From positions 248,001 through 312,000 of the forward strand of contig NW_024055654.1 in assembly GCF_902713615.1 (NCBI RefSeq): a stretch of 64,000 bases of DNA. Reading direction: 5' to 3'. Of the stretch, positions 780 to 64,000 are shown one piece after another; position 1 is the stretch's first letter; each line of letters begins with the position of its first letter. The translations under genes were made by a program, and so were the position numbers. The notes below the pieces were generated by a model. It was given only the letters and a program-made list of their open reading frames with translations, did not search any database and was not told the origin of the DNA. Source of the stretch: Scyliorhinus canicula (lineage: Eukaryota).

Positions 780-1325
780 AGAAGCCGGAAGTGACGGACT
801 GTGAGAGTGGAGACTGTTCATTGTTCGGCTCTGGGGCCGCACTGGGGTTTGTAAACCCCGCCCCCCGACAGACCTCTCGCCTGACACCTCACAATGCGCG
901 AAGTGATTGACGGCAGCACTGACCAATAGGCAAAGAATAAGTTGGAACGGAGGACCTGTGGGGAGTCAGGAGTCCTCCTACCAATCAGCGTGAATGAGGG
1001 GGCGGGACGGGGCTGAATGAAGCATGCGCAGTGTGATTAATGGCGACACAGAAAAACGTTCGTTCTCGGATCCACAATCCGTAAAGGTGGGAATGACGGG
1101 ACCGAGGGAGAGATGAATCAGGCGCGTCGTTGGACACACTACATAAATATGTGATATAAACCGAAAACCCGTAAAAATAACCTACCGGTACCGGGGGCCC
1201 TGAGCGAGGCCTGCAGCTTTCTCACAGACAGGACGATGGAGCCGCCATCTCTAGCGCGCGTTAGCGGGGTTGCGCATGCGCACCCATTAACTTTATTTGG
1301 GCACTAGCAGTGCGCACGCGCACCC
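780..1325. promoter_or_regulatory. CpG-island promoter containing a reverse-oriented copy (890-1035) of the ZNF promoter module
   Basis: ETS-like CCGGAAGTG, GC boxes, two CCAAT, NRF1-like GCATGCGCA/TGCGCATGCGCA and YY1-like GCCGCCATCT. The reverse complement aligns by eye to 24245-24395. Confidence 0.7.
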
Positions 1326-1334
1326 ACCATTTTT

Positions 1335-1555
1335 TTTTTAAATTTAGATTAGCCAATTATTTTTTCCAATTAAGGGGCAATTTAGTGTGGCCAATCCACC
1401 TACTCTGCACATTTTTGGGTTGTGGGGGCGAAACCCACACAGACACGGGGAGAATGTGCAAACTCCACACGGACAGTGACCCAGAGCCGGGATCGAACCT
1501 GGGACCTCAGCGCCGTGAGGCGGTTGTGCTAACCACTAGGCCACCGTGCTGCCCC
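1335..1555 (-). mobile_element. HE1-like tRNA SINE, tail type C (poly-A), 16-bp TSD
   Basis: TSD CGCACCCACCATTTTT at 1319-1334 and 1556-1571. Nearly identical to the copy at 12249-12468. Confidence 0.9.
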
Positions 1556-1894
1556 CGCACCCACCATTTTTATTGGGGGCAGCAGCAGCGGAGTTCAGGC
1601 TCAGTCGCCATCATTGTTGAGGGCAACATTGAGAATTGTTTCATCGTGACAGACTGTTTCACTCTGAGTTACAAATTCCTATTTATGAGACAGAACAATG
1701 ATACATTTCCAGGGCTGTGACGATAATTCAAATTTATTTTGACAGAATAAAGTTTTTTGAGACATTTCAGAGAAATGTTACAAAATAACAATTGACACTG
1801 AGCCTCAAGAGGAGATATTAGATTTTAATAATAATCGTAATAGAGGAAAGTGAGTGAGAGAGTTGGAGATTTTTAAGGAGGAAATTCCAGAGCT

Positions 1895-2215
1895 AGTGTG
1901 GAGCATGCGCAGTGTCACTTTGCTTGGGGCCCTGTGCGTGCGGGAGACGCTTTTCTGAACGGGTGAGAGTCGGTGGGCCGGAGGGAGGAATTGAGCCGGG
2001 GTGGGGAGGGAGCCGAGGCTTCATAAACACCCAATGCAGGTCTCACAACCTCAATAGGAACCTGGAGGCCCCGGGTTTGTAACACCCAGGCTTTTCCCCA
2101 GGGAACAGGCCCAGGTGACCGGCCGCCATCTTGGATCAGTGGGGAGTGACGGGCATGCGCCGTTATGTGACGCAATAGTGTGGGCGGGGCCTCAGGGTTC
2201 CGGTGACCGGGGACA
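1895..2215 (+). promoter_or_regulatory. CpG-rich promoter or first-exon-like region upstream of the ZNF gene at 7377
   Basis: GCATGCGCAGTG and a GC box. GGAACAGGCCCAGGTGACCGGCCGCCATCTT (YY1-like) is paralogous to 62517-62552. Confidence 0.55.
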
Positions 2216-2329
2216 GTCTCCTTTGGGACCTTTCTGTTCTCAGAGCTGGATTCAGGTGGACTCAGAGGCAAAACTGGTTCAGGTGGTGATGGACATCCTG
2301 GTGCATCCTCAGTCACCGAGAGTAATTAT

Positions 2330-2610
2330 GCAACATGTCGAGGATTTGAAAGAGAGAAACATGCCCCAATTTGATGCATTTTTATTTATGAGGCATCGAG
2401 GTGTCGCCCAATTCTCAGCAACATTTGTCACTGAGCCATACATGGAGATATCAGAGCAGGTGGACAAAAGCTTGTATATAAGGTAGGTTTTAAGGAGATT
2501 CTGAAAATAGGAAAGTGAAGGAGTGAGCAGGAGAGTTTTAAGGAAGAATTTCCACAGCTTGGCTCTCAGGCAACTGAAAAAATAGGCACCAGTCATAGTG
2601 ATTAATATTG
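2330..2610 (-). mobile_element. old L2-like LINE 3' remnant
   Basis: Resembles 1740-1895 and 51400-51800. Degenerate. Confidence 0.45.
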
Positions 2611-2621
2611 CAAATGCTGAG

Positions 2622-7154: not shown

Positions 7155-7376
7155 TAATGACCGGCTCCACAAATGACCAGATTCATTCAGCTCAATTTCA
7201 CAACCTGCCTTTGTGTTTTTGTGGGTTCTCTCTCACTCCCTATTTTCTGTTTTAAATCAGTTTCACAGGGTGTTCGAAGGGGAGGCTTCAAAGTCCAGAA
7301 ACTCAAATCAAGCATCACATCAGGATCTGACAGAGTCCTCAATTTATCAGATCCTGAATATCATGGGATTTTGAAC

Positions 7377-8234
7377 ATGGAAGCAAAAAGCATTGTTCAC
7401 AGTGGGGAGAAACCGTACACGTGTTGTGTGTGTGGACGAGGATTCACTCAACCATCAAGCCTCACAAGCCACAAATGCAGTCACACTGAGGAGAAACCGT
7501 GGAAATGTGCGGACTGTGGCAAAGGATTCACTTCCCCATCCAAGCTGGAAACTCATCGACGCAGTCACACTGGGGAGCGACCGTTCACCTGCTCCAAATG
7601 TGGGAAGGGATTCACTCAGTCATCCTCACTGTCCACACACCAGCGAGTTCACTCCAGGGAGAGACCATTCACCTGCTCCGAGTGTGGGAAGGGATTTACT
7701 ATTTCAGCCCACTTGCTGAGTCACCAGCGAGTTCACACTGATGAGAGACCGTTTCAGTGTCCAGACTGCGGGAAGTGCTATAAAAGTTCTGGGGAACTGA
7801 TGCGCCATCAACGTGTTCACACTGACGAGAGACCGTTTAGGTGCTCTCACTGCGGGACTGGGTTCAGGCGATCATCTGACCTCACTGTACATCAGCGAAT
7901 TCACACAGGGGTGAGGCCATTCACCTGCGCCAAGTGTGGGAAAGGATTCACTCAGTCATCCGATCTGCAGAAGCACCAGCGAATTCACACTGGGGAGAGG
8001 GCATTTACCTGCTCCAAATGTGGGAAGGGATTTACTACATCATCCATCTTGCTGGCACACCAGCGAGTTCACACAAACAAGAAAACTTTTAAATGTCCAG
8101 ACTGTGAGAAAGGCTACAAAAGTTCTGAGAAACTGATGCTCCATCAACGTGTTCACACTGACGAGAGACCGTTCAGGTGCTCTCACTGTGGGACTGGGTT
8201 CAGGCGAACATCTCAACTCGCTGCACACCAGTGA
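7377..8234 (+). CDS. class-1 tandem C2H2 zinc-finger protein; 9 complete fingers, premature TGA in finger 10 (ancestral ORF to TAA 8498, 13 fingers)
   Basis: CxxC-x12-HxxxH repeats with TGERP/TDERP linkers. Splice acceptor TTTCACAG at 7268 and ATG at 7377. Three more in-frame fingers follow the stop. Confidence 0.85.
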
Positions 8235-8819
8235 GTTCACACTGACAAGAGACCTTTCAAATGTCCAGACTGTGGAAAGTGCTTTAAAAGTTCTGGGGAA
8301 CTGACCCGTCACCAACGTGTTCACACTGAGGAGAAACCATTCAGGTGCTCTCACTGTGGGACTGGGTTTGTGCGATCATCTCAACTCACTGTACATCAGC
8401 GAATTCACACTGGGGAGAGGCCATTCCCCTGCTCCGAGTGTGGGAAGGGATTCACCACTTCATCCCACCTACTGAGACACCAATGTGGCCACAAGTAACC
8501 ACAGTGATTAGATTTTGCGATGTTCAGTTGGGTCTTTTTCTGCTGATAAATTCAAGCCCATTTACAGGGGCTAATATACTGGCTAAAAGTCAAATAAATT
8601 AGATTTGTGTGAAATACGCAGTGTGCTGAACCTTTTTAATATCTCTAACACAAGTCAGTCCCTTTTGAAGTACTCTCGTTCTCCCCTGTCTCTTCCATCC
8701 TCCCCTCCAACAAGAAGTGGGAGGAGCTGGTGGAGCTTCTTTGTGACTGAGATTAAGTAAATCTGATCAGCTGCCTCTGCTGCTTCCCTCCCTTCCATGA
8801 GCCTCTAATTTTCCTCATT

Positions 8820-10690: not shown

Positions 10691-10999
10691 CATCCACACA
10701 CCGAACACGTGTATGGTTTCTCCCCGCTGTGAACGGTGCAATGTTTTTTCAGGCTGTGTAACTGGTTAAAGCTCTGTCCACAGTCAGTTCACTGGAACAC
10801 TCTGACTCGAGGAGTCTGTGTCGCGGTGCTTTTCCAGTCACACTGATGTCTGAAATCTTTTCCCACAAACAGTACAGAGAAACATTTCTCCTTCCACATT
10901 CAAAGGCCGATGATATTCAGGTTCTAAAAAATTGAGTGACTGTCAGATTTCGATATTTGGTTTCAGTTTTCTGTCGGCCAATGCTCCACTTCCAATATC
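10691..10999 (-). pseudogene. 5' remnant of a class-2 ZNF coding exon (leader only, finger array deleted)
   Basis: Reverse complement reads ..[52 protein letters not shown] and then abuts CR1. Acceptor at 11000-11002. Confidence 0.8.
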
Positions 11000-11284
11000 C
11001 TGTAAAAGGAGTTTATAAAAGCCATCACTGTCAGTCCAGATTAGAAATTCTGAACAGGCAATTCTAGTTTCTCTGGAACATTTGTTACTCTCTTGTTCCC
11101 CCAAAGCTGTAAATCCCCATCCTACACACTCTCCCTCCTCCCTGGGCTGAAATCCAAACCCATCTGCACCATTTCTTTCCTCCACTCCCAGTTTTCTCCC
11201 TCCCTCTCCTCTGCCTGGGTTCAGTTCTCCAGCTCCTGTCTGCAGACTGACAATAAAATCAATGGGTCTTATTGGGGGGTCCAG

Positions 11285-11540
11285 CTTCATACCCGCACTG
11301 CGCATGCTCCAATCCAAAATGGCTGTGGAGTAATGGGTGGCAGCTCCGGACCAATAGGAAGCTAGTAATCAAGGTCTGGATTTTCCGTGGCAACCAGCCA
11401 CCATCTTGGGACAGGAAGGCGAATGTTTCATTCAGAGATTGAGTGCTGGGGGTGGCCATCTTGGTATGGGTAGAGGGAGTGGGCGGGACTTCCTCCCGGG
11501 TCACCCGGTGGCTGCCGCCATCTTGTGGCGGGATTTTCTA
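11285..11540 (-). promoter_or_regulatory. promoter-like region of the ZNF remnant
   Basis: NRF1-like TGCGCATGC, CCAAT, three YY1-like CCATCTT motifs and a GC box. Confidence 0.55.
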
Positions 11541-20804: not shown

Positions 20805-22529
20805 CTACTCACATATGACATCAGACAGCTCCTCCCAGGTGTGAGTGCGCTGGTGTGTCAGCAAGTTGGATGACTGAGTGAATCCTTTCCCACACTGAGA
20901 GCAGGTAAATGGTCTCTCTCCAGTGTGAACTCGCTGGTGTGTGAGCAGGTGGGATGACTGAGTGAAACGCTTCCCACACAAGGGGCAGCTGAACGGCCTT
21001 TCCCCAGTGTGAAGTCGCTGGTGTGTCAGCAGGTAGGATGAGGTAGTGAATCCTTTGCCACACACAGAGCAGGTGAATGGCCTCTTCCCCGTGTGAATAC
21101 GCTGATGTACAGTGAGGTCAGATGATCGCCTGAACCCAGTTCCACAGTCAGAGCACCTGAACGGTCTCTCATCAGTGTGAACACGTTGATGGGACATCAG
21201 TTCCTCAGAACTTTTATAGCACTTCCCACAGTCTGGACATTTAAAAGGTCTGTCCTCACTGTGAACTCGCTGGTGTCTCAGCAGGTTGGATGAATGAGCA
21301 AATTCCTTCCCACACTCAGAGCAGATGAATGGCCTCTCCCCGGTGTGAACTCGCTGGTGGGTCTGCAGATGGGATGAACAAGTGAATCTCTTCCCACACC
21401 CGGAGCAGCTGAATGGTCTCTCCCCAGTGTGAGTGCGCTGGTGGGTCTGCAGTTGTGATGAGGCACTGAATCCCTTCCCACACTCACTGCAGGGGAACAG
21501 CCTATCCCCAGTGTGAATTCGCTGGTGTTCCAGAAGACTATATCTCTGAGTGAATCTCTTCCCACAGTCTGAGCAGGTGAATGGCCTCTCCCCAATGTGA
21601 ATGTGCTGGTGTCTCTGGAGGTTGTGTGAGTGACTAAATCGCTTCCCACACCTGGAGCAGGTGAATGGTCGCTCCCCAGTGTGAACCCGCTGGTGTCTCA
21701 GTAAGTAGGCTGTACAAATGAATCCCTTTCCACACTTGGAGCAGATGAATGGTTTATCTCCAGTATGAATGCGTTGGTGTGTCAGCAAGTTGGATGACTG
21801 AGTGAATCTTTTCCCACATTTGGAGCAGATGAATGGTCTCTCTCCAGTGTGAACTCGCTGGTGTGTCTGCAGGTGGGATGACTGAGTGAATCCCTTCCCA
21901 CATTCAGAGCAGGTGAATGGCCTCTCCCCACTGTGAATACACTGGTGTGTCAGCAGGTAGGATGAGGTAATAAATCCTTTCCCACACTCAGAGCAGGTGA
22001 ACGGCCTCTCTCTGGAGTGACTGCAATGATGTACAGTCAGATCAGATGATCGTCTGAACCCAGTCCCACAGTCAGAGCACCTGAACGGTGTCATGTCAGT
22101 GTGAACATGTTGATGGGACATCAGTTCCCCAGAACCCCGACAGTGTTTCCCGCAGTCTGGGTATTTAAAAGGTCTCTCGTGGGTGTGAGCTCGCTGGTGT
22201 CTCAACGGGTTGGCTGAGTGAGCTAATCCCTTCCCACACTCGGAGCAGCTGAACGGTCTCTTCCCAGTGTGGACTCATTGGGGTCAATAGGTGGGATGAG
22301 GTAGTGAATGTCTTCCCACACTCAGAGCAAGTGAGCGATCTCTCCCTGTGTGTGTCACTGTGAATTTCCACTTCAATGGGTAATTGTATCCCTTCCCACA
22401 GTCCACACGTTTCTACGTTCTCTCTGCTGTAACTGCGTTTGGCTCAACAGGACAGCTGATCGGCTGAAATCTCAGCCACACAGAACCTGAGCACAGTTTC
22501 CACTGTGAACGGTGTTGTTTCCCTTCCAT
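20805..22529 (-). CDS. class-1 C2H2 ZNF; open frame 22205-20805 has 15 intact fingers, while the 5' part (ATG 22529 to ~22270) is frameshifted, so it is a possible pseudogene or uses an internal Met
   Basis: 466-aa ORF in the track. Class-1 leader GATTTTGAACATGGAAGGG. Acceptor at 22625-22627. Confidence 0.75.
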
Positions 22530-23059
22530 GTTCAAAATCCGTCAGCATTTGGATGATGATGAATTGGGCGACTATGTAAGATTCTGATGTGATGTTGAGT
22601 TTCAGTTTTCCAATGTTCAACCTCCTGTAAAATTGACAGAAAACAGAAAAGTGTGAGAATGAAATTGAGCTGAATTAATTTGGTCAGTTTGGGAAACACT
22701 CGGAAAAAGTGACCATGAAAACTGCTGGATTGTCATGAAAACCAACTGGTTCAGGAATGTCCTTCAGGGAAGGAATCCTGCCAACTGGTCTGGGCCAACA
22801 CAAGATTCAGACTTCTATAGGAGGAGGGAGAATGGAAGAGAGAGTGAGAGGAGAGGTGGGAGAGGTAGGGAATGAAGGAAAGGGTTTTTATCCATCTACA
22901 GCTTGACCAGACGTTTACAAATCTCTCAAGCCTTCAGCCTCCATCACCATAAAGGACCAGGGCAGCATGTGTATGACAACGCATTCACCTACAAATTCCT
23001 CTCCCAGTCACACACCGTACTGACATACTGAACTGGATGAGCAAACATTTACTGCATTT

Positions 23060-23520: not shown

Positions 23521-23529
23521 CCTCCTCCA

Positions 23530-43800: not shown

Positions 43801-44598
43801 CGCTAACAGCCCCACATCCAGCCGCCACAGCGGGCGCTGGTCCCGCGCCTCCCCCATTTCCACATCCACCCAATGCGGTGCATGATCAGAGATCGCAATG
43901 GCCGAGTACTCAGCTTCCCGTACCCTCGGGATCAGCCCCCTGCTCAACACGAAGAAATCGATTCTGGAGTACACTCTATGGACGTGGGAGAAAAAGGAAT
44001 ACCCCCTCGCCCTCGGCCTACCAAACCTCCATGGGTCTACTCCTCCCATCTGCTCCATGTACCCCCTCAGCACTTCTGCCGCTGCCGGCCTCCTATTGGT
44101 CCTTGAGCTCGATCTGTCTAGCCCGGGGTCCAGCACTGTGTTAAAGTCCCCCCCCATGATCAAGCCCCCTGCCTCCAGTCCCGGAATGAGGCCCAATAGG
44201 CGCCTCATAAAACCCGCGTCATCCCAGTTCGGGGCATATACGTTGACCATCACCACTTTCTCCCCCTGCAGCTTACCCTTCACCATCACATACCTACCCT
44301 CCTTATCCGCCACCACCTCCTCCGCCACGAACGACACCCTCTTTCCCACCAGAATCGCCACCCCCCGGTTCTTTGCGTCCAATCCAGAGTGGAACACCTG
44401 TCCCACCCACCCCCTTCTCAGGCGAACCTGGTCCACTACCTTCAGATGGGTCTCCTGTAACATTGCTACATCAGCCTTCAGTCCCTTCAGGTGTGAGAAT
44501 ACCCTTGATCTCTTGACCGGCCCATTCAACCCCCTCACGTTCCAAGTGATCAGCCGGGTCGCGGGACGACCCGCCCCCTTCCCCTGCCGATTAGCCAT
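40803..44598 (-). CDS. L1 ORF2p (APE endonuclease, reverse transcriptase, Cys-rich C-terminus), ~1264 aa, with one +1 frameshift near 42099
   Basis: WNVRGLN, LQETH, GGDFN, SDH, KAPGPDG, YADD and CxxC..HxxWxC motifs. The 879-aa and 431-aa ORFs join if one T is removed from TGCTTTGCCC. Confidence 0.95.
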
Positions 44599-45369
44599 GT
44601 CCTGTTCCCTGCTCGCCCCGGGTCGACCCTTCCCTTCTGACCCGCTCCCCATGGCGATGTCCCCCTCCCCCCACCTCTCCAGCCCTCCACTTCCCGTTTC
44701 TGGTCTTTTCAGCAGCAACCCGGTATCCCTCCCTAACCCCCCTCACCCCCCACCCCCAGGCTAGGACCCCTCCTAGCCGCGATGTACCCTCCATCGTACT
44801 CCCGTAAGTCAGCTGGTTCACGCTGACCCGGCTGCTCCTGCCACACTCCGACTCCCCCCGGCTCGGGGGGGGGGGCCTCCCCCCCCTTGCCACTCCTCCC
44901 TGGCCCCGCTCCAGCGCGGGAAAGGTCGCCATTGCTAGCCACGCCCCACACTCCTCCCCTCCCCCCTCCTCTGCCCCGCGCGCGGGAAAACAGAGGAAAG
45001 CCCGCGCTTTCGCCCTGCCACACCCCACCCCGCCATCTTCAGTTCCACCCCCGTCCCCGTCCATGCCTGTAAAAGAACCCCCCCTAGGAACCCATATCCC
45101 CGATCTGCTCTCCCCCCCGTCCCACCTCCCCAACTTAACATTATAAATAACAGATAAATAACAAATAACAATGTACTTAACAGTCGCCCTCTACCAAACA
45201 GCATAAATAACCATAAATAACCATGAATAACCACAATAACAATAACTAAGGGAAGTTGGCAAAGGGGGAAAAAACATCAGAAGAAAAACCACAGCAAGAG
45301 TTCAAAATCCAAACAAAGAATTCAGCAGAAAGTACCCGAGCGGCTACGGCCGCCAAGTATCCCCTGGGT

Positions 45370-46215
45370 CTAATTCGAGTCCAGTTTCTCTTCCTGTACA
45401 AAGGCCCACGCCTCCTCTGGGGACTCAAAATAGTGGTGTTGGTTCCTGTAGGTGACCCACAAGCGCGCTGGCTGCAGCATTCCGAACCTGATCCGTTTTG
45501 CATGTAGCACCGCCTTCGTCCGGTTGTACCGGGCCCGCCGCTTTGCCACCTCCGCACTCCAGTCCTGGTAGACCCTCACCGTCGAATTCTCCCACTTGCT
45601 GCTCCTTTCCCTCTTGGCCCACTCCAGCACTCTCTCACGGTCGCTGAGTCGCTGGAACCGCACCAGCACCGCCCTCGGGGGCTCATTTGCTCTTGGCCTC
45701 CTAGCCATGACCCTGTAGGCCTCTTCCAGCTCCAGGGGCGAAGGGACGGCCCCTGCCCCCATCAGGGAGCTCAGCATTTCTGCTACATATCCCGGGAGGT
45801 CTGACCCCTCCAGGCCTTCTGCCAGGCCCAAGATCCTCAGGTTCTTCCGCCTCATTCGGGTATCCAGCTCCTCAAAACGGCTCTGCCATTTCAGGTGGAG
45901 TGCCTCGTGCACCTCTACCTTTCCCACGAGGACCGTGGCCTCCTCCTCCCTCACAGTCATCTCCTGTTGCAGCTCCCGAATCGACGCCTCTTGGGTCGCC
46001 TGGGCTCCCATCAGCCTGGTGGTCGTCGCATTCATTGACTCCAAGAGCTCCATTTTCAGCTCCGTAAAGAAGCGCAGGAGAGCGGCCTGCTGCTCCTCCG
46101 CCCATTTCCTCCATTCCTCGGGTGCGCCACCGGCCGCCATTTTGGTCTTCTTCCCCCGCTTTTTTTTGGGAGCTGCTGTTGCTTTCTTTACCACCCCACT
46201 CCGGGTACCGACCAT
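45370..46215 (-). CDS. L1 ORF1p (coiled coil, RRM, C-terminal domain); start at ATG 46215 or 46140
   Basis: RRKNLRILGLAEG, AYRV..PRAVLVRF, YQDWS..RR and PARLWVT are L1 ORF1-type motifs. Confidence 0.9.
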   Translation of the reverse strand: MVGTRSGVVKKATAAPKKKRGKKTKMAAGGAPEEWRKWAEEQQAALLRFFTELKMELLESMNATTTRLMGAQATQEASIRELQQEMTVREEEATVLVGKVEVHEALHLKWQSRFEELDTRMRRKNLRILGLAEGLEGSDLPGYVAEMLSSLMGAGAVPSPLELEEAYRVMARRPRANEPPRAVLVRFQRLSDRERVLEWAKRERSSKWENSTVRVYQDWSAEVAKRRARYNRTKAVLHAKRIRFGMLQPARLWVTYRNQHHYFESPEEAWAFVQEEKLDSN

Positions 46216-46529
46216 AAAGTTGGTCTGGTTCTCTTCAGGGAGCCTTCCCCCACCGGGATTTGTCCTTACAGCGCCGTTGGGGCCCTCCAATCGGCCCGAA
46301 AACACCTTTGTAGCAGGAGCAGCCAAACGTGCGACTTAGCTGGTCATAGCCGCAACCGGAAGTCCAGGATAGGAATTGAGAGACATTTTTCTTGTCTGTT
46401 GCAAATCCTTCCCTCTTAATCCTGAAGTTTCTAAACACTCCGTGCAAACTGAGCGCGGGATTTTGTAATTCAGGTTTGCAGTCCTACACCGAGTGTTTGA
46501 CAATCCCTCCCAGTCCACTCTCCTGCACT

Positions 46530-46960
46530 CGGCCCGTTTCTCCGGTGGACTTTCAACCTGGCCGCCTTCTTCCTGATCCGGAAATCGCACTGCGCATGCT
46601 TCACCTAGCTCCGCCCCTTATTACTCCAATTGGTTGGAGGACCAGCCGCTCCCGACCTCCATCACCTATTGGTCCGAGGCCGATGTCAATCAATGTGCTG
46701 GAGCATGCGCAGCCGAAAGATTCTGACCAGGAGCCAGCTGCTTTTTAAAGGCGGAGTGCAGATCCAGAGGCGAAAATAAACCCGTGAATCGAGATAGAAC
46801 CGATGGGGAGGTAAAAGAGACTTAATAAATTAATTAAATGGACACTGAATCCTGAATAAGCTCTGGGTCCCGCGATTGCTCGGTGCTGAGACTTTTCTCC
46901 AGCACAGGCCTGATTTAACGGCCGCCATCTTTTTGCGGGGCAATGACCTTCCATCAGGGC
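46530..46960. promoter_or_regulatory. CpG island and bidirectional promoter with the ZNF module at 46587-46712
   Basis: TGCGCATGC, CCGCCCC, ATTGG twice, GCATGCGCA and YY1-like CGGCCGCCATCTT. Donor-like GAG/GTAAAA at 46811. Confidence 0.7.
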
Positions 46961-47458: not shown

Positions 47459-48159
47459 TGGCGAATGCAGCAGGGAGCTATCATCTCCTATGGAGTTGTT
47501 TAGGTCCAGAAGAGGCCCCTTTCCTAGACACATTCCATTTTCCGAGTATGAATATATGGACCTTCTCGCAAGTGTTAGTGGAACACTTTACGAGCCCGAC
47601 TGAGAATCTTCAAAATTTGGTATTCCTGTGTCTGTCGCGATGTGTATCAGATATAAAAGGTTTTGACACAACGTCCTTTTAGCAATACTCCAGTGTCTTA
47701 AAGGATGAGAAAGTAGGAGACAGAGAGAGAGATGGAAAGAGAGAATTTCAGAGTTTGAGGATGAGAGATCAGAAGGCATGGTCACTAATGGTGGAACAAT
47801 GAAAAAGCGAATTAGAGAAGCGCAGATATCTCGGAGGGTTGTAGAGATGGGTGATGAAGCCGTGGAGAGATGTGAACACAATGAGGAGAATTTTAATCTA
47901 AAGGCATTTAGAGTGAGAAAGAGATGAAAAATTGTTCCATAGAAACTGGAATTCTATATTTTTATTTTTGGGTGATGACTTTTGCAAACTCTTTTTGCAG
48001 ATAATTAGAAAAAGAGGATTTGCAGATGGGAAACTTGAATCAAATATCATATAAAGATCCAGCACAGTCACTCGATTCATCAGGACCTGAATATCTTCTG
48101 GCTTTGAATTGGAAGGAAATGTTCATCTGTTCTGTCTGTGGGAAAAGACCTCAAACAAA

Positions 48160-48390
48160 ATGTGACTGGAAAAGCATTGAGACACACACACCCGAGTGAG
48201 AGTGTTCCAGTGAACTGACCGTGGAAACATCAGTGTGACTGGAAAAGCAGCGAGACCCACACAACACACACCCGAGTGAGAGTGTTCCAGTGAACTGACT
48301 GTGGAAACATCAGTGTGACTGGAAAAGCACCGAGACCCACACAACGCACACTCAACTGAGAGAGTTCCAGTGAACTGACTGTGGAAAGAG
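48160..48390 (+). repeat. triplication (73-80 bp) of a dead zinc-finger segment in the ZNF 5' leader
   Basis: TGTGACTGGAAAAGCA..GTTCCAGTGAACTGAC.GTGGAAA occurs three times. Confidence 0.9.
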
Positions 48391-48512
48391 CTTTAACCAG
48401 TTACATAGTCTGAAAAAAACACACCATTACAGTGGGAAGAGATTTTACAAGTGTGTGTGCACGAAGACTTAACTGATCATTCAACCTGGAAAAACACAAG
48501 GACACCCGCACA

Positions 48513-49271
48513 ATGGAGAAACCCTGGAAATGTGAGGACTGTGGGAAAGGATTCAGTTGCCCAGCCCTGCTGGAAATTCATCGACGCAGTCACACTGGGG
48601 AGAGACCATTCACCTGCTCCGAGTGTGGAAAGGGATTCACTCAGTCATCCCAACTGCTAACACACCAACGGTTTCACACTGGGGAGAAACCGTTCACCTG
48701 TTCTGAGTGTGGGAAGGGATTCACTCAGTTATCTGACCTGCGGAGACACCAGCTAGTTCATACTGGGGAGACTCGTTTCAGCTGCTCCGAGTGTGGGAAG
48801 GAATTCATTCAGTCATCCAATCTGCTGAGACACCAGCAAGTTCACACTGGGGAGAGACCGTTCACCTGTCCTGTATGTGGAAAAGCATTCATTGGGTCCT
48901 CTGACCTGCTAAGTCACCAGCGGATTCACAGTGAGGAGAGGCTGTTCAGCTGTACATCCTGTGGAAAGAGATTCCGGACTTCAGCCCACCTCAGTGTACA
49001 CCAGCGAGTTCACGCTGGGGAGAAGCCGTTCATCTGCTCTGAGTGTAGGAAGCAATTTGCTCAGTTATCTCACCTACAGACACACCAGCGAATACACACT
49101 GGGGAGAGACCATTCACCTGCTCTGAGTGTGGCAACAAATTCACTTGTTCATCCCACTTGAGGAGACACCAGCGAGTTCACACAGGGAACAGGCCATTTA
49201 CCTGCTCCACGTGTGGGAAGATATTCACTCAGTCTGGCAGCCTGCTGAGACACCAGCGAGTTCACAAGTGA
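48513..49271 (+). CDS. intact class-2 C2H2 ZNF, 252 aa, 9 fingers
   Basis: MEKPWKC start and HQRVHK* end. Acceptor TTTTGCAG at 48000. Confidence 0.9.
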   Translation: MEKPWKCEDCGKGFSCPALLEIHRRSHTGERPFTCSECGKGFTQSSQLLTHQRFHTGEKPFTCSECGKGFTQLSDLRRHQLVHTGETRFSCSECGKEFIQSSNLLRHQQVHTGERPFTCPVCGKAFIGSSDLLSHQRIHSEERLFSCTSCGKRFRTSAHLSVHQRVHAGEKPFICSECRKQFAQLSHLQTHQRIHTGERPFTCSECGNKFTCSSHLRRHQRVHTGNRPFTCSTCGKIFTQSGSLLRHQRVHK

Positions 49272-54845: not shown

Positions 54846-55715
54846 TTACTCGTGAACTTGCTTGTGTCTCAGCAAGTTGGATATCCGAATGAATCCCTTC
54901 CCACACTGAGAGCAGGTGAATGGCCTCTCCCCAGTGTGAACTCGCTGATGCATAGTGAGTTCAGATGATCGTCTGAACCCATTCCCGCAGTGAGAGCATC
55001 TAAACGGTCTCTCGTCAGTGTGAACACGTTGATAGAATACCAGATCCCAGGTCCTTTTGTAGCACTTCCCGCAGTCTGGACATTTAAAAGGTCTCTCATC
55101 AGTGTGAACTCGCTGATGGGACATCAGTTCCCCAGAACCTTTAAAGCCCTTCCCATAGTTCTGACATTTAAATGGTCTCTTGTCTGTGTGAACTTGTTGG
55201 TGTCTCAACAGGTTGGATGAATCAGTGAATCCTTTTCCACACTCGGCGCAGGTGAATGTCTTCTCCCAAGTGTGAACCCGCTGGTGTTTCAATAGGTTGG
55301 ATAAATCATTGAATCCTTTCCCACATGTGGAGCAGGTGAATGGCCTCTCCCCAGTGTGAACTCGCTGATGTCTCAGCAGGCTAGATAAATGAGCAAATTC
55401 CCTCCCACACTCGGAGCAGTTGAATGGTTTATCCCCAGTGTGAATTCTCTGGTGTGCCAGCAGGTTGGATGACTGAGTGAATCCCTTACCACATGTGGAG
55501 CAGGTGAATGGTCTCTCCCCGGTGTGACTGCATCGATGAGTTTCCAGCTCAGACGGGGAACGAAATGCCTCCTCGCAATCCCCACATTTCCACCGTTTCT
55601 TCCCAGTGTGAATGTGTTTGTGTCTCCTCAAGCCTGACGATTGACTGAAGCCTTGTCCACACACAGAACACGTGTACGATTTCTCCCCAGTATGATCGGT
55701 GCTTTTCCCTTCCAT
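54846..55715 (-). CDS. class-1 C2H2 ZNF, 289 aa, 9 intact fingers and 1 degenerate finger
   Basis: Open [15 protein letters not shown]...HKQVHE*. Acceptor at 55815-55817. Confidence 0.88.
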
Positions 55716-55995
55716 GTTCAAACTCGATGATATTCAGGGCAGGATAAATTGGATAACTGTCAGCTCCCGATGTGGTTTGAGTTTCCTGACTGCAAATCCT
55801 CCCCGTCTAATGCCCTGTGAAATTGATTTAAAACAGAAAAACAGTGAGAGAGAACCCACAAAAATCACAAAGGCAGCTTCTGGAATTGAGCTGAATGAAT
55901 CTGGTCATTTATGGGGCCGGCACTGGGAAAAAGTGACCATGAAAACTGCTGGATTTTCGTAAAAATCCAACTGATTCACTGATATCCTTCAGTGA

Positions 55996-59479: not shown

Positions 59480-60430
59480 AAGGGATGTTTAAGGTTTTGT
59501 ACCTGAATGCTCGGAGCACTGGAACTAAAATGGATTAATTAGTTGCGCAGATAGATGTAAAGGAGTATGTACAGTTGGGATTACAGAGACATGGCTCTGT
59601 AATCCCAACTGTAGGCTCTGTAATCCCAACCAAGGATGGGAACTAAACATTGAGGGCTATTCAGTTTTTAGGAAGGACAGACAGAAAGGAAAAGGCAGTG
59701 AAGTTGTATAATTGATTAAAGAAGATATTGATATCATATTGAGGAAAGATATTAGCACCGATAGTGTGGAATGTGTGTGGATCGAGTTAGGAAACACCAA
59801 GGGTCAAAAAGCATTCATAGGGGAGGTAATCAGACCACCAAACTGCACTGGTAATGTTGAAATAGCATCAGACAGGAAATCAGAGATACATGTGATCAGG
59901 GAATCTGTGATCTTGGGTGACTTCAATCTGCACATTGATTAGGCTAATCAAACTGGTAGCAATGCGATGGAGAAGGATTTCTTGGAATTTGTAAGGGATG
60001 GTTTTCTCGACCAATATGCCGAGGAACCAACGAGAGAGCATTGTCAAGGCCAAGATCGATGGGTTTTTAATCAGTTGGGGAATGAAGGGTTACAGAGAGA
60101 AGGCAGGAAAGTGGACTCAGTGAGTGGTTGATCTATGATCTTAGTAAATGGCAGAGCAGACTCAAAGGGCTGAATGTCATACCCCTCTTCCTATTTCTTA
60201 TGGTCTTGTGGAGATTGAGGGGAAATTGATAGAAGTGCACAAGATTGTTAGGTTTAGATAAGGGTGTTCAACAAATGCTGTTCCTATCCGCTGATTGTAA
60301 AAGATTACATGACACAGATTTAATATTTTGAGCAATATCTACATGGGGGAATGTGAGGAAGAAGTTTTACTCAGTGTGGGGTAATAACTTGAACTCAATG
60401 CTTACACTCAAAGGGAGATAATATTCAGCT
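59480..60430 (+). mobile_element. degenerate CR1 fragments (APE N-terminus and 3' tails)
   Basis: LYLNARS, GITETWL and ILGDFN motifs. Confidence 0.75.
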
Positions 60431-60919
60431 CCTGATAAATCGAACGATGCAGTCAGACTGAGATGTGAGATTTGGTTTGAATTTCCTGTCTGCAAATCAT
60501 CTTCCAATATCCTGTAAAATACATTTACAAAAGCCATCACTGTCAGTCCAAAAATGAAATTCAGAAGAGACAAATATTTCTCTTGGTTGGAGTTTTCTAT
60601 GTGTAAATCCTCCCCTTGTAATCCCCTGTAAAAGGAGTTTCCAAAATCCATCTCTGTCAGTCTGGGATAGAAATTCACTACATTCTCTCCTCCTGCTGCC
60701 AATGCATGCTCCTTGCTGCACTTGGCCCCTTGTCATTATCATCAGCAGACCCTTGATTCAAGGATGATATCTCCTCAGGGTCGTGTTTTTCTGCTACGGA
60801 TCTCCATGTGACTTAACTGTGACTGCAGATCTTTGGACACACTCCACTTATTGCTGACCCGCTATCCAGCCCCATCGCTCCACGCCAGCCACACAGTATA
60901 AATTTGACCCTATTTCCAA

Positions 60920-61225
60920 TTCTCTAGCTTTGACAAAGGGTCATCCAGACTCAACATTAGCTCCCTCCTCTCTCCACAGATGCTGTCAGACATGAAAATG
61001 AAGAAATTAAAATCGCTTATTGTCACGAGTAGGCTTCAAATGAAGTTACTGTGAAAAGCCCCCAGTCGCCACATTCCAGCACCTGTTTGGGGAGGCTGTT
61101 ACGGGAATCGAACCGTGCTGCTGGCCTGCTTTTAAAGCCAGCAATTTAGCCCTGTGCTAAACAGCCCTGACATGACAAGATTGTTCAGTATTTTCTGTTT
61201 TTGTTTCAGATTCCAGCATCCGAAT
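60920..61225 (+). mobile_element. Penelope-like terminal fragment with a nested short SINE (60996-61168, TSD GACATGA)
   Basis: TSD at 60989-60995 and 61169-61175. Confidence 0.6.
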
Positions 61226-61335
61226 AAGATGCCTTTAACTCCATGAGGTAGTTCAATCTGGACAGCAGGATTTGCTTCCTCTTCCTTCTGTATTTTCCTC
61301 AACAATAAGACATTGGGACTAAAGGCTAATACTGT

Positions 61336-61842
61336 GGGCGTGATTCTGCGCTCCCCACGCCGGGTGGGAGAATCGCGGGAGAGCCGCTGTGTCACCCCAC
61401 CGCCATTCTCCCCCCCCCCCCCCCCCGCGACACGCTGCTTGGAGAATCGCCGCTCGCCGTTTTTCCCGGCGACCGGCGATTCTTCGGCCCAAATGGGCCG
61501 AGCGGCCTGACAACTTGCGGGGCAGTGGAGGGGAAGACGGCAACCGCGCATTATCGGGTTTGAGCCGGTCAACCTGCGCATGCGGGGCTGACGCCGGCCG
61601 CGTCATTCTTGGCGCGCGGCTTTGAGGCAAGCATCAAGGCCCGGCGGCCGAGTTTCCCGCAACGCCGCTCCTAGCCCCCCGGGGGAGGGGGGAATGGGGG
61701 GGGGAAGGGGGGAATGGGGGGGGGGAGAAGAGGAGGGGGGGAGAATAGGGGGGGAGAATAGAGGGCGAGGAGCGGCTTCTGACGCCGGAGTGAAACACTC
61801 CAAGTTTCACTCCGGCGTCGGCCGTTGCGGAGAATTTCGCCC
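61336..61842. mobile_element. non-autonomous DNA transposon (PIF/Harbinger-like MITE)
   Basis: Imperfect terminal inverted repeats GGGCGTGATTCTGCGC / GCGGAGAATTTCGCCC. 3-bp TSD TGT at 61333-61335 and 61843-61845. Confidence 0.7.
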
Positions 61843-61859
61843 TGTGTCTCCATTCTGAA

Positions 61860-62560
61860 CAATGGGTAACAAGCTCCTCCCAGTCGTTGCCCCCTATAAA
61901 GATGGCGACCACGCATGTGCCCTGCTGCACATTACCCCAATTAAGATGGCGGCCGTCAACACGCCCAATCATACAAATGGGGGGGGAAAGAGAGGGTTGA
62001 TCGGTTCTTTTTTAGGATTTGCGGTTTGCAGAACATATTTAGGAAGCCGTTTCGCCCACCCACTGGGTCCTTTGCTCCCTCTGAACCGCCATACGCACCG
62101 ATTGCGGATCAGAAAAACAAACATCTCACCCCCGCCATTACGCACACTGCGTATTCCCATCTCCCAGCTTGGTCCCGCCCCTTCTTCAGTCCGATTGGTT
62201 GGAGGACCAGCCGCTCCCTTTCGGTCTTCCCGCCCTCCCCCGCCTCCTATTGGTTCAGATCTGCCGCCAATCATTCCTCGGCAACTTGAAGCATGCGCAG
62301 TGTCGCTGCTGGAGCTGGACAACGGTGCGCAGGCGCATTGGCAAAGAATTTCGAGCATGCGCAGTGTGATTGATGCCTCGGCCCTTGTTTGTCCCGGAGA
62401 AGCGGAGTCAGCATCAGGCGGTGGGTGGGAGGATTTGGAAACACTTTGTGGGTCCGCAAACCCTTCACCATCATTGTCAGCTCCCTGGTTTGCAGCTGCG
62501 GGGCTTCTCCCTCCCTCCCGGGAACAGGCCCAGGTTAACGGGCACCATCCTGCTTCACAC
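61860..62560. promoter_or_regulatory. CpG island and bidirectional promoter with the ZNF module at ~62143-62302
   Basis: YY1-like AAGATGGCG twice, GC boxes, ATTGG/CCAAT and GCATGCGCAGTG twice. Confidence 0.7.
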
Positions 62561-63108
62561 ACTGGAGGGTGGTTCACATCACAGGATGGGGGAGGTGGGA
62601 TAATAAATAAGAGCTGACACTTTGCACTCAAATCAATGAGGACTCTGATCTCTGGCAAGGAAGGAAACCCTGGCAGGTGGGCGGGGAGGATTCACAAACA
62701 CTGGCTTGAGGCTCCAAACCCCCCTTTGACTGTCGGTGATGGATTTTGTGAAATTATTTTTACAGGATGTTAGCAGAATTTTCGGATGTGAAACTCAAAC
62801 CAAACTTCACATCAAGATGCTTCAGTGATTTGATTCACCAGAACCTGAATATCATCAACCTTTGTATACAGAAGGAGAAATTTTTGTTCCGCCTGTGGGA
62901 AAAGATCTGATCCATCAGTGTTACTGAGAAAGCACCGAGATACACAAATACCCGAGAGAGAGTTTCCAATGTGCTGAACCTGGAAAGAGCTTTCACCAGC
63001 CTGAAAGAAAAACCACAGCATTCACAGTGAGTAGTCACCCTGGACATATTCTGTCTAAACGAGGCTTCAACATTATCCAAGCTGGAGACACACGAGGACA
63101 TTCACATC

Positions 63109-64000
63109 ATGGAGAAACCTTTGAAATGTGGGGACTGTGGCAAGGGATTCAATTACCCATCTGCATTGGATATTCATCGACGTATTCACACTGGAGAGAG
63201 GCTGTTCACCTGTCCTGTGTGTGGGAAAGGATTTGCTTACTCATCCAGCCTGTATACACATCAGCGTGTTCATACTGGCGAGAGGCCATTCACTTGCCTC
63301 GAATGTGGGAAGGGATATCATGCTTTATCAAGCCTCCTGATTCACCAGCAAGTTCACTCTGATCAGAGACCATTTCAATGTTCTGATTGTGACAAAAGCT
63401 TTAAAAGCACAAAGGACTTGCTGAGACACCAGCGCACTCATATGGAGGTGAGGCCTTTCACCTGCTCAGTGTGTGGGAAGGGATTCACTCAGTCATCCCA
63501 CCTTGTAACACACCAACTTGTTCACTCTGATAAGAGACCTTTTCAATGTTCGCACTGTGAGATGTGTTTTAAAAGTAAAAATGATTTACAAGCCCATCAG
63601 CGCACACACACTGGGGAGAAGCCATTCACCTGTTCTCTCTGCGAGAGGAGATTCGGACGTTTATCTCAGCTACAGACACACCAGCGAGTTCACTCTGATC
63701 AGAGACCATTTCAATGTTCTGACTGTGGGAAGAGCTTTAAAAGCAAACAGGATCTGGTGACACACCAGCGAGTTCACACTGGAGAGAGGCCATTCACCTG
63801 CTCTGTGTGTGGGAAGGGATTCACCCATTCATCCCACCGTCTGAGACACCAGCGAGTTCACACTGGAGAGAGGACATTCATTTGCTCTGTGTGTGGGAAG
63901 GGATTTATTGATTCACCCCACCTTCTGATACATGAGCGAATTCACACTGGGGAGAGACCGTTCACTTGCTCCATGTGTGGGAAAGGATTCACTCAGCCAT
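63109..64000 (+). CDS. class-2 C2H2 ZNF, at least 10 fingers, runs off the end of the window
   Basis: Manual translation [23 protein letters not shown]... shows no stop before 64000, so it is absent from the ORF track. Acceptor at 62765. Confidence 0.88.
   Translation, partial: MEKPLKCGDCGKGFNYPSALDIHRRIHTGERLFTCPVCGKGFAYSSSLYTHQRVHTGERPFTCLECGKGYHALSSLLIHQQVHSDQRPFQCSDCDKSFKSTKDLLRHQRTHMEVRPFTCSVCGKGFTQSSHLVTHQLVHSDKRPFQCSHCEMCFKSKNDLQAHQRTHTGEKPFTCSLCERRFGRLSQLQTHQRVHSDQRPFQCSDCGKSFKSKQDLVTHQRVHTGERPFTCSVCGKGFTHSSHRLRHQRVHTGERTFICSVCGKGFIDSPHLLIHERIHTGERPFTCSMCGKGFTQP

What the first reader, a model, noticed from the sequence alone, without database searches (positions are those of the whole stretch)
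780..64000. KRAB-less zinc-finger cluster apparently built from a repeated head-to-head two-gene unit (class 1 <- promoter -> class 2)
Seen: three times, a class-1 gene on the minus strand (22529, 37791, 55715) faces away from a class-2 gene on the plus strand (27445, 48513, 63109). Each time a paralogous promoter module lies between them in the same orientation (24245/25310, 46587, 62143). The fourth module (890-1035) is inverted and is followed by a plus-strand class-1 gene (7377), which fits an inverted unit whose class-2 partner would lie left of the window. Exceptions: the class-1 gene at 34694 and the class-2 remnant at 10691 have no visible partner. Known: tetrapod KRAB-ZNF and cyprinid FiNZ-ZNF clusters are implicated in transposon repression, and KRAB-ZNFs are a lobe-finned/tetrapod family. 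Inference: this may be an independent cartilaginous-fish ZNF system whose duplication unit is a co-regulated gene pair.
Basis: partly seen in the sequence, partly recalled or inferred. Interest (0 to 1): 0.85.

Follow-up and report, generated by a model that had tools for sequence, protein, structure and literature searches.

The report
Shark finger-only ZNF pairs sharing promoter
This stretch of a catshark-type genome holds zinc-finger genes with no effector domain, copied as blocks around one promoter island; they belong to an undescribed family of over 1000 copies found in sharks and rays, but shared two-way use of the promoter is not yet shown.

Summary
The predicted minus-strand class-2 gene exists 3.3 kb left of the window.

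The module is a CpG-island promoter with a first exon. It carries GC boxes, inverted CCAAT boxes and outward NRF1-like palindromes. RNA contigs show a GT..AG splice (24779>25689) at exactly the predicted leader-exon borders on its sense strand. Both classes share one gene plan: module exon, non-coding leader exon(s), then one coding exon. Class 2 is a class-1-type gene with a dead ATG and dead first fingers.

No class-1 gene has a sense module of its own close upstream. Five of six face the antisense side of a module. That side carries a conserved YY1-like start signature (237 exact genomic copies, control 0) and a donor-like site. Antisense transcription was not seen in the one unit I could test.

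Genome-wide, class and side are not coupled. Of 29 class-1/module neighbour pairs, 10 lie on the antisense side pointing away, 15 on the sense side pointing away, and 4 point toward the module. One pair block exists in five copies at 94-98% identity under purifying selection.

No KRAB was found genome-wide. First readers flagged the same pattern on two other pieces of this genome. Transposon repression is untested.

The parts
872..1054 (-). Module M4 (promoter island, inverted). Its sense side faces the class-2 gene left of the window.
   Evidence: nhmmer E 4.9e-36; CpG island 651-1700, o/e 1.14
1020..1087 (+). Predicted antisense first exon of M4 for class-1 gene Z1: outward GCATGCGCAGTG, YY1-like TAATGGCG, donor-like G|GTGGGA at about 1086-1088.
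   Evidence: Conserved with ML3, M3 and U7. The 341-nt block is kept at 81% identity or more over its full length in the 40 best genomic matches. Transcription not shown.
7269..8492 (+). Class-1 gene Z1, single coding exon: acceptor 7269, ATG 7377, 13 fingers, in-frame stop after finger 10 (ORF ends 8234).
10693..11361 (-). Truncated class-2 unit: dead-finger leader 10693-10887, leader 10890-11021, partial sense module 11289-11361.
20805..22624 (-). Class-1 gene Z2: 16 fingers; leader and first fingers frameshifted, so probably a pseudogene.
24223..24423 (+). Module M1a. It has the left outward motif but lacks the conserved antisense exon/donor block.
24693..24779 (+). Non-coding leader exon of class-2 gene Z3. 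It is homologous to the class-1 leader, and its donor replaces the old ATG.
   Evidence: GT..AG joint 24779>25689 in contigs of three runs; borders predicted independently
25263..25467 (+). Module M1b, a tandem second copy lying inside the 24780-25688 intron.
   Evidence: nhmmer E 3.7e-49
25689..27873 (+). Class-2 gene Z3 last exon, split by a LINE RT fragment at 25900-27135(-): leader from 25689, dead fingers, ATG 27445, 5 fingers, stop 27873.
   Evidence: The joints at ~25806-25809 > 27224-27280 lack GT..AG ends, so I read them as contigs of paralogues without the insertion.
32507..32610 (+). Upstream non-coding leader exon of Z4 (acceptor plus GTAAGC donor).
34587..35977 (+). Class-1 gene Z4: ATG 34694, 427 aa, open. 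It has no module of its own and lies 9.1 kb downstream of M1b on the same strand.
37095..37899 (-). Class-1 gene Z5: ATG 37791; stops after 152 aa, 3' fingers decayed.
40355..40439 (-). Upstream leader exon of Z5. Without the LINE it lies about 0.54 kb from module M2.
40757..46326 (-). LINE insertion (endonuclease and RT ORFs) between the Z5 leader exon and M2.
   Evidence: Pfam RVT_1 3e-40, Exo_endo_phos 7e-16; 81% copy at 17744-19951
46566..46733 (+). Module M2, with outward 12-mers on both sides.
48001..49271 (+). Class-2 gene Z6: acceptor 48001, dead-finger 5'UTR, ATG 48513, 9 fingers, 252 aa, intact.
54846..55814 (-). Class-1 gene Z7: ATG 55715, 289 aa, open; two fingers have lost a zinc ligand compared with its copies.
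60406..60511 (-). Upstream non-coding leader exon of Z7 (acceptor plus GTAAGC donor), about 1.6 kb from M3 on its antisense side.
62099..62160 (-). Predicted antisense first exon of M3 for Z7: degenerate outward motif, TAATGGCG, donor G|GTGCGT after 62099.
   Evidence: CpG island 61051-62550. Not shown by RNA.
62129..62320 (+). Module M3.
   Evidence: nhmmer E 8.5e-43; four further copies at 93-98% identity
62766..64000 (+). Class-2 gene Z8: acceptor 62766, ATG 63109, runs past the window end to about 64340; 410 aa, 14 fingers counted.

Best explanation
The window is part of a very large family of finger-only C2H2 zinc-finger genes found in sharks and rays. All members follow one plan.

1. A promoter module of about 200-450 nt sits in a CpG island. 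It has two GC boxes and two inverted CCAAT boxes. It is flanked by outward-pointing GCATGCGCAGTG elements (NRF1-like palindrome plus CAGT). It ends in a short non-coding first exon.
2. One or more non-coding leader exons follow.
3. A single last exon holds the rest of the leader, the ATG and all the fingers.

Class 2 is a derived form of class 1. The old ATG is dead, about 235 nt of dead fingers now serve as 5'UTR, and a new ATG arose in the linker before finger 2.

In this 114-kb stretch the genes were multiplied by segmental duplication and inversion of blocks built around one module: class 1 <- module -> class 2, sometimes followed by another class 1. That history gives the repeated head-to-head picture.

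Shown: the module and its copy number; the gene plan; spliced sense-strand transcripts running from the module region through leader exons; block duplication; purifying selection on both partners.

Inferred: the same island also fires in the antisense direction. The transcript would start at a conserved YY1-like/NRF1-like element, pass a donor about 50-70 nt on, and splice to the class-1 leader acceptor 0.5-1.6 kb away once transposon insertions are discounted.

The proteins most likely bind DNA through their variable fingers. What they bind and how they act without an effector domain is unknown.
For: - Classes and modules.
- Left-flank prediction fulfilled.
- Promoter-like content and CpG islands only at modules, apart from transposons and tandem repeats.
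- Sense transcription: stranded raw reads on the RNA-sense strand at 24400-24599 and 25400-25799, and a GT..AG joint 24779>25689 in three runs that matches the predicted exon borders.
- Common gene plan and dead ATG. Class-1 leaders form a clade with support 0.99.
- No class-1 gene has a sense module between itself and the antisense module.
- The antisense flank is conserved among module lineages that differ by about 30-35% overall. The 341-nt module-plus-antisense block is kept at 81% or more over its full length in the 40 best matches. There are 237 exact copies of CGCCATTA-NN-CACACTGCGC-N35-65-GATTGG against 0 in the control.
- Of 29 class-1/module neighbour pairs within 10 kb, 25 point away from the module, 10 of them on the antisense side. 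This is a hand cross-match; binomial p about 5e-5.
- Block duplication: five collinear copies of 15 kb or more at 94-98% identity.
- Reading frames are kept, with dN/dS 0.0-0.6.
- Family size: 1036 module cores, 1089 class-2 starts, and between 218 (strict pattern) and 2058 (first-look candidates) class-1 leaders.
Against: - The only unit laid with reads showed no minus-strand RNA between the module and the class-1 exon. Strand counts were zero for 22800-24400 in the stranded run. That unit's class-1 gene is a pseudogene and its module lacks the conserved antisense block, so the test is weak.
- Most reads and contigs laid were 95-99% alike, so many come from paralogues.
- Several class-1 genes on the antisense side are damaged (Z2, Z5, partly Z1 and Z7).
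- Elsewhere, back-to-back module dimers give each gene its own module (also C17:132903387/735 and C32:11882/12234). This shows a one-way design also exists.
- Of the 10 module loci sampled elsewhere, which reduce to 5 independent ones, only 2 show the class 1 <- module -> class 2 layout.
- The neighbour-pair counts rest on exact-pattern lists that catch perhaps a third of copies, and they include recent duplicates.
Confidence: 0.6

Rival explanations
1. The module is a one-way promoter serving only the sense-side gene. The class-1 genes on its antisense side were carried along by block duplication. They are silent or decaying, or they are driven by unrecognised promoters of their own.
For: Only sense-strand RNA was seen at M1a/M1b. 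Z2, Z5, Z1 and the window's Z7 carry defects. Back-to-back module dimers exist. Class-1 genes lie on the sense side of modules in 15 of 25 outward pairs.
Against: The antisense flank, with a YY1-like site, an outward NRF1-like motif and a donor-like site, is conserved across diverged module lineages and in 237 or more exact genomic copies. Leader exons with acceptors (upZ7, upZ5) sit 0.5-1.6 kb from the antisense edge, with no other conserved or CpG-rich element between. Four of five copies of Z7 keep a 289-aa frame, with dN/dS 0.04-0.6.
Confidence: 0.3
2. Class-2 and class-1 last exons on the same side of a module are alternative terminal exons of one transcription unit. Examples are M1 -> Z3 -> Z4, and the recurrent sense spacings of about 5 kb and 9-10 kb. 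The functional unit would then be one promoter with several ZNF exons, not a gene pair.
For: Z4 has no module or homologous promoter of its own, but it has an upstream leader exon with both an acceptor and a donor (32507-32610). Sense-side class-1 leaders recur at uniform distances of about 5.0-5.9 kb (8 loci) and 9-10 kb (3 loci) from modules.
Against: No joint from the M1 exons to 32507 or 34587 could be tested, because the laid stretch ended at 27990. A CpG-rich stretch at 31651-32400 just upstream of the Z4 leader exon could act as a separate start, although it has no module motifs.
Confidence: 0.2
3. The repeated pattern has no regulatory meaning. It is the footprint of a few segmental duplications and inversions in a repeat-rich, poorly assembled scaffold.
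For: Duplicates at 92-99% identity are common among the sampled loci. The window is on an unplaced 4.1-Mb scaffold. Distances between units are star-like and give no partner-tree signal.
Against: The six local units differ by 20-35% in leaders and modules, yet all keep the same layout. Outward orientation relative to modules holds in 25 of 29 neighbour pairs across many scaffolds. Coding sequences are under purifying selection.
Confidence: 0.15

Closest known systems
KRAB zinc-finger gene clusters of tetrapods, lungfish and coelacanth
   Same: Large families of poly-C2H2 genes that expand fast and are lineage-restricted. They sit in clusters rich in LINEs and segmental duplications, and all fingers are in one exon.
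   Different: There is no KRAB exon. A genome-wide six-frame search found none at E<=0.001, and the proteins begin 5-14 residues before a finger. Upstream exons are non-coding. The family shares a stereotyped promoter module and leader. Transposon binding is untested.
FiNZ zinc-finger genes of cyprinid fish (Wells et al. 2023, PMC10547256)
   Same: A KRAB-less ZNF expansion restricted to one fish lineage, with hundreds to thousands of copies and a family-specific conserved 5' part.
   Different: FiNZ is defined by a conserved N-terminal protein domain. Here the conserved part is non-coding (module plus leader), together with the framework of the first one or two fingers. The paper does not mention sharks.
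Vertebrate bidirectional CpG-island promoters (divergent gene pairs with starts less than 1 kb apart; rich in NRF1, YY1, NF-Y/CCAAT and SP1 sites)
   Same: TATA-less CpG island with GC boxes, CCAAT boxes, NRF1-like palindromes and YY1-like sites. It sits between divergent genes, and donor sites lie on both strands within about 70 nt of outward motifs.
   Different: The motif names come from my knowledge of the consensus sequences, not from binding data. The antisense start is not demonstrated. The partners are paralogues, and the whole arrangement is multiplied many times.
RefSeq/Gnomon models in other elasmobranchs named 'zinc finger protein 239-like', 'ZFP2-like', 'gastrula zinc finger protein XlCGF...-like'
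   Same: The same N-termini are annotated. [14 protein letters not shown] occurs in Chiloscyllium, Cetorhinus, Mustelus and Pristiophorus. MEGKS..H.GEK.Y.C occurs in Cetorhinus. The PEYH/SEYH leader is read into models from Scyliorhinus torazame, Pristiophorus and Mobula.
   Different: These are automatic names borrowed from unrelated tetrapod genes. I found no paper that describes the family, its module or its layout.

Membership tests
Poly-C2H2 (Krueppel-type) zinc-finger proteins | Tandem C-X2-C-X12-H-X3-H fingers joined by TGEKP-type linkers | tested here: met
   Pfam zf-C2H2 1.9e-56 to 2.4e-71 and zf-H2C2_2 up to 2e-79 for Z1, Z4, Z6 and Z7; 5-16 fingers per array
KRAB-ZNF | KRAB A-box exon upstream of the finger exon | tested here: not met
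   PF01352 six-frame search of the whole genome: 74 candidates, none at E<=0.001. No KRAB in the proteins. Upstream exons are non-coding leaders with stops before the ATG. Caveat: the tool's controls cannot ring for an animal domain.
SCAN-ZNF | SCAN domain N-terminal to the fingers | tested here: not met
   No SCAN in the proteins. The 150 scored genomic PF02023 matches (of 4506 candidates) are spread over the chromosomes, and none is on scaffold C262.
FiNZ-ZNF | Conserved N-terminal FiNZ protein domain before the fingers | tested here: not met
   The proteins start at MEKPWKC (finger 1) or at MEGKS plus 9 residues before finger 1, which leaves no room for a domain. No FiNZ profile was available for a direct test.
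Bidirectional promoter (divergent pair with starts less than 1 kb apart) | Transcription start on the sense strand at the island | tested here: met
   Sense-strand reads and contigs from about 24383 onward, and the spliced joint 24779>25689. Many reads may come from paralogues that are 95% or more alike.
Bidirectional promoter (divergent pair with starts less than 1 kb apart) | Second transcription start on the opposite strand of the same island, joined to the other gene | tested here: inconclusive
A conserved antisense signature and donor-like site exist.
Tandem/segmental duplication unit made of the gene pair | Both partners and the module copied together | tested here: met
   Five collinear copies of Z7-M3-Z8, 15 kb or more, at 94-98% identity on scaffolds C262, C428, C460, C451 and C499
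Tandem/segmental duplication unit made of the gene pair | Congruent trees of partners across the older units | tested here: inconclusive
   Leader and module distances are star-like (0.2-0.4). Mantel r is -0.03 to 0.29, not significant.

The most novel reading that the evidence does not exclude
Sharks and rays have evolved their own system of over 1000 effector-less zinc-finger genes. It would be driven by a stereotyped, truly two-way promoter island, so that divergent partners are switched on together. It would work as a transposon- or repeat-binding defence without any KRAB-like domain, perhaps with the conserved first fingers (framework [20 protein letters not shown]) recruiting cofactors.
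Probability: 0.2. Interest if true: 0.75.

Novelty: new variant of a known kind. Interest (0 to 1): 0.5.

Why it matters
KRAB-ZNFs are the textbook vertebrate answer to transposons, but they are reported only in lobe-finned fishes and tetrapods. Cartilaginous fishes have 68% repeat content in this species (PMC11979771) and no KRAB-ZNFs.

A family of over 1000 finger-only genes, found in sharks and rays, with a shared promoter, shared dead-finger 5'UTRs and recent bursts would be a natural candidate for an independent solution. More than 40 leaders are 93-96% identical. I found no paper on this family.

The stereotyped module also offers a compact test case of how one promoter island is reused when genes are copied. 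The same island is found facing genes on one side, on both sides, or doubled back to back.

If the module is only a one-way promoter and the pairs are duplication debris, the finding reduces to a well-annotated example of ordinary ZNF cluster growth.

Tried and rejected
- **Spurious ORFs.** The 1203-aa ORF at 12804-16415 and the ORFs at 5341-6351 come from 17-nt and 39-nt tandem repeats. ORFs across M3 (61862-62658) have no Pfam match.
- **Gene models of this genome.** The look-up of encoding contigs withholds them. The S. torazame locus came back without DNA.
- **Genome-wide sampling by fetching DNA.** I fell back on coordinate lists from pattern searches, which are capped at 100 rows and need exact matches.
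- **Class-2/module cross-match.** It was uninformative. The class-2 list ended at C17:114 Mb, where few exact module cores occur.
- **Partner-tree congruence among the six old units.** No signal.
- **Joints at 25806-25809 > 27224-27280.** I first took them for splicing. I rejected that reading because they lack GT..AG ends and exactly skip the LINE fragment, so they are better read as contigs of paralogues without the insertion.
- **CpG-rich stretch at 31651-32400 upstream of Z4.** It has no module motifs or homology.
- **Positive selection on DNA-contact residues.** Among the five young class-2 copies, 1 of 19 variable sites is a contact site where 2.6 were expected. No signal.
- **General protein homology search.** It returns ZNFs from all vertebrates and says little.
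- **Module as part of a transposon.** Rejected. It has no terminal repeats or transposon ORF, and apart from two duplicate-pair loci in the sample it sits next to ZNF leaders.

Full report
**What genome this is.** The window is G000:C262:248001-312000, on an unplaced 4.13-Mb scaffold of a 4,220,406,627-base assembly in 646 pieces. The small-spotted catshark assembly sScyCan1.1 is described as 31 chromosomes plus 614 unassembled contigs, 4.22 Gb in all (PMC11979771). The closest class-1 protein model comes from Scyliorhinus torazame. I therefore take the genome to be a Scyliorhinus, most likely S. canicula. The tools themselves code the organism. Follow-up notes on other findings in this scan also call it catshark.

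**Checking the observation.** A C2H2 motif scan finds eight arrays. In-frame translation shows two leader types.
- Class 1 reads ...[29 protein letters not shown]. Members are Z1 at 7377(+), Z2 at about 22530(-), Z4 at 34694(+), Z5 at 37791(-) and Z7 at 55715(-).
- Class 2 starts at [23 protein letters not shown], which is the second finger of class 1. Members are Z3 at 27445, Z6 at 48513 and Z8 at 63109, all on the + strand.
- The shared module lies at 872-1054(-), 24223-24423, 25263-25467, 46566-46733 and 62129-62320.
- I fetched 30 kb to the left and 20 kb to the right of the window. One more unit lies further left: class 1(-) at -20156 and a module(+) at -18842.
- So five of five full module loci in 114 kb have a class-1 gene leaving the antisense side and a class-2 gene on the sense side.

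**The two exceptions.** The remnant at 10693-10887(-) carries its own leader and a partial module in sense orientation (11289-11361). The extra minus-strand class-2 gene at about -13860 has the same (partial module at -13424..-13345). Z4 lies downstream of Z3 on the sense side of M1a/M1b.

**What the module is.** Aligned copies share the following, in order:
- a GC box (CCCCGCCCC);
- an inverted CCAAT box inside GATTGGTTGGAGGACCAGC;
- a second GC box and a second inverted CCAAT box;
- GTCAATCA;
- on one or both flanks, an outward-pointing GCATGCGCAGTG, which is an NRF1-like palindrome followed by CAGT.

These factor names rest on my knowledge of the consensus sites, not on binding data. The modules coincide with the window's CpG islands (o/e 0.86-1.14 against 0.43 overall). 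The other CpG-rich stretches are tandem repeats, LINE sequence or a repeat-like piece. The 19-nt core occurs 1036 times in the genome with up to one mismatch; the reversed control occurs once.

**RNA evidence.** I chose 22000-27990, the only unit that fits whole.
- The stranded raw-read run places Z3-exon reads almost entirely on one strand, which fixes the library's direction.
- By that rule, sense-strand RNA is present at 24400-24599 and 25400-25799, just downstream of M1a and M1b.
- Contigs of three older runs, which are only guessed to be RNA, carry a GT..AG joint 24779>25689. These two positions are exactly the donor and acceptor that I derived independently from the alignment of leader-like elements (24693-24779 and 25689 onward).
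- So the module's sense side gives spliced transcripts that run through non-coding leader exons toward the class-2 finger exon.
- Two cautions apply. Most records laid are only 95-99% alike and may come from paralogues. The joints near 25806-25809 > 27224-27280 lack canonical ends and skip exactly the LINE RT fragment at 25900-27135, so I read them as paralogues without that insertion, not as splicing.
- No minus-strand RNA was seen between M1a and Z2. However, Z2 is frameshifted, and M1a lacks the antisense block described below, so this is a weak negative.

**One gene plan for both classes.** A profile of the leader finds 16 leader-like elements in the 114 kb. All share the acceptor TTTYACAG|GATATTAGAA.
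- In class 1 the leader runs into ...TTTGAACATGGAAG and the fingers.
- In class 2 the same leader reads ...TTTGAATGTGGAAGG, so the ATG is lost. About 235 nt of dead fingers with stops follow, and a new ATG lies in the former TGEKP linker.
- Upstream of Z4, Z5 and Z7 there are extra leader exons with both an acceptor and a donor (32507-32610, 40439-40355, 60511-60406). The Z4 and Z7 exons share GTAAGCATTGAG after the donor.
- Class-1 leaders form a clade with support 0.99.
- In Z4, Z5 and Z7 in-frame stops lie between the acceptor and the ATG, so the proteins consist of fingers only. Pfam finds nothing but C2H2 families.
- A six-frame search of the whole genome finds no KRAB at E<=0.001.
- SCAN-like matches are numerous but spread over all chromosomes. 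None of the 150 scored is on this scaffold. I take them for retrotransposon gag relatives.

**Does class 1 start at the same island?** Every class-1 last exon, and every upstream leader exon, begins with an acceptor, so a first exon must lie further upstream.
- The module profile finds no sense-oriented module between any class-1 gene and the antisense module.
- Discounting transposon insertions, the first acceptor-bearing exon lies 0.5-1.6 kb from the module's antisense edge: ML3 1.2 kb, M1a 1.6 kb, M2 0.54 kb without the LINE, M3 about 1.6 kb.
- The antisense flank is conserved among module lineages that are otherwise 30-35% apart. It holds an outward GCATGCGCAGTG, then TGATTAATGGCG (YY1-like), about 45 nt, a donor-like G|GTGGGTATGG, and further out one or two GCCATCTTT boxes.
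- The 341-nt stretch of M4 plus this flank has 809 first-look candidates, and the 40 best are 81% or more identical over the full length.
- The signature CGCCATTA-NN-CACACTGCGC-N35-65-GATTGG has 237 exact copies and none in the control.
- This pattern fits a functional antisense start, but it is not proof.

**Is the pair a genome-wide rule?** No.
- Ten module loci fetched elsewhere reduce to five independent ones:
  - the Z7-M3-Z8 block (four more copies);
  - one further class 1 <- module -> class 2 unit (C105);
  - a duplicate pair with a convergent class-2 gene and no class 1;
  - a duplicate pair with no ZNF gene within 10 kb on one side and none within about 9 kb on the other;
  - a back-to-back module dimer 265 nt apart, with each module facing its own class-2 gene.
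- Two more such dimers show up in the coordinate list (C17:132903387/735 and C32:11882/12234).
- I cross-matched by hand the coordinate lists of module cores, antisense signatures and class-1 leaders. This gives 29 class-1/module pairs within 10 kb: 10 on the antisense side pointing away, 15 on the sense side pointing away, and 4 pointing toward the module. Outward orientation is therefore strongly favoured (25 of 29; binomial p about 5e-5).
- Class 1 is not tied to the antisside. The sense-side pairs cluster at about 5.0-5.9 kb (eight loci) and 9-10 kb (three loci). The second spacing matches M1b -> Z3 -> Z4 in the window.
- These counts rest on exact patterns that probably catch a third of copies, and they include recent duplicates.

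**Duplication and selection.**
- The window's Z7-M3-Z8 block is collinear over 15 kb or more with four other scaffolds at 94-98% identity, with indels. I judge this too diverged for haplotype copies.
- All five class-2 copies keep a 410-aa frame. Four of five class-1 copies keep 289 aa. Pairwise dN/dS is 0.0-0.6 for both partners. So both genes have been under purifying selection since these duplications.
- The window's own Z7 has since lost a zinc ligand in two fingers.
- The leader of Z1 has more than 40 genomic copies at 93-96% identity, which points to a recent burst.
- Among the six older units, distances are star-like and partner congruence cannot be judged.

**How old and how wide.** Protein models starting [14 protein letters not shown] are annotated in Chiloscyllium, Cetorhinus, Mustelus and the squalomorph Pristiophorus. 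MEGKS-type starts occur in Cetorhinus. The PEYH/SEYH leader is read into models from S. torazame, Pristiophorus and the ray Mobula, and class-1-type first fingers occur in Hemitrygon and Hypanus. Both classes therefore predate the split of the main shark lineages, and the class-1 type reaches rays. The names given are automatic ('zinc finger protein 239-like' and the like). I found no paper describing the family: the whale-shark and catshark genome papers and the metazoan ZNF survey do not treat it.

**Earlier notes of this scan.** First readers flagged the same head-to-head idea on two other pieces of this genome (s1-213903, s1-195981). They also noted dead-finger 5'UTRs and an effector-less ZNF cassette (s1-203730, s1-195939, s1-223453). 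These are unchecked leads. My class-2 anatomy agrees with the dead-finger 5'UTR reading. The 'stop 13 codons before the start' holds for Z6 but not for Z3 or Z8.

**Verdict.** The locus is built from duplicated and inverted blocks around one promoter island. The island demonstrably serves the sense side, and it plausibly (about 55-60%) also serves the antisense class-1 genes. The specific class-1/class-2 pairing is a local and recurrent layout, not a rule of the family. Transposon repression remains a guess by analogy.

Noticed in passing
window 12823-16441 and 4684-6307: Two long tandem arrays (units of about 17 nt and about 39 nt, roughly 90% alike). The first creates a spurious 1203-aa ORF with strong strand skew.
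   Followed up: partly
window 40757-46326(-); 17744-19951(-); 25900-27135(-); 10041-10562(+): A LINE with long endonuclease and RT ORFs (879 aa and 431 aa) is inserted between a class-1 leader exon and module M2. There are also an 81% sister copy and two RT fragments, one of which splits the last exon of Z3.
   Followed up: partly
G000:C17:130724870-130725574(-): Eight exact module cores within 700 nt, spaced about 63-125 nt apart: a tandem array of the promoter core itself.
   Followed up: no
G000:C17:130416xxx (L024/L025), C17:132903387/132903735, C32:11882/12234: Back-to-back module dimers about 265-350 nt apart. At the one fetched, each module faces its own class-2 gene. This could be the ancestral state of the single two-faced island.
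   Followed up: partly
G000:C17:111.5-114.1 Mb: About 65 exact class-2 start sites but only one exact module core in 2.6 Mb. This large class-2 array may use a diverged or different promoter.
   Followed up: no
window 7758-8408, 21093-21239, 34991-35641, 37432-37494, 54936-54998: Class-1 arrays repeat a fixed two-finger cassette ([26 protein letters not shown] + [21 protein letters not shown]). Class-2 arrays carry CSDC.KSFKS.KDL..HQR.H fingers. These fingers have near-constant helices and may not read DNA.
   Followed up: no
whole genome: The Pfam SCAN model has 4506 first-look candidates spread over all chromosomes, many in open frames of 100-470 aa. They are probably gag of a Gypsy-type retrotransposon family.
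   Followed up: no
window 62340-62375: M3 carries a second outward GCATGCGCAGTGTGATTGATGCC element on its sense side. It nearly matches the antisense-side start signature, so the same start element can sit on both faces of the island.
   Followed up: partly
P0033, P0049 (Hemitrygon akajei models): Stingray relatives with class-1-type first fingers are modelled with N-terminal extensions of 190-215 aa that have no Pfam match. These could be real ray-specific domains or model artefacts.
   Followed up: partly
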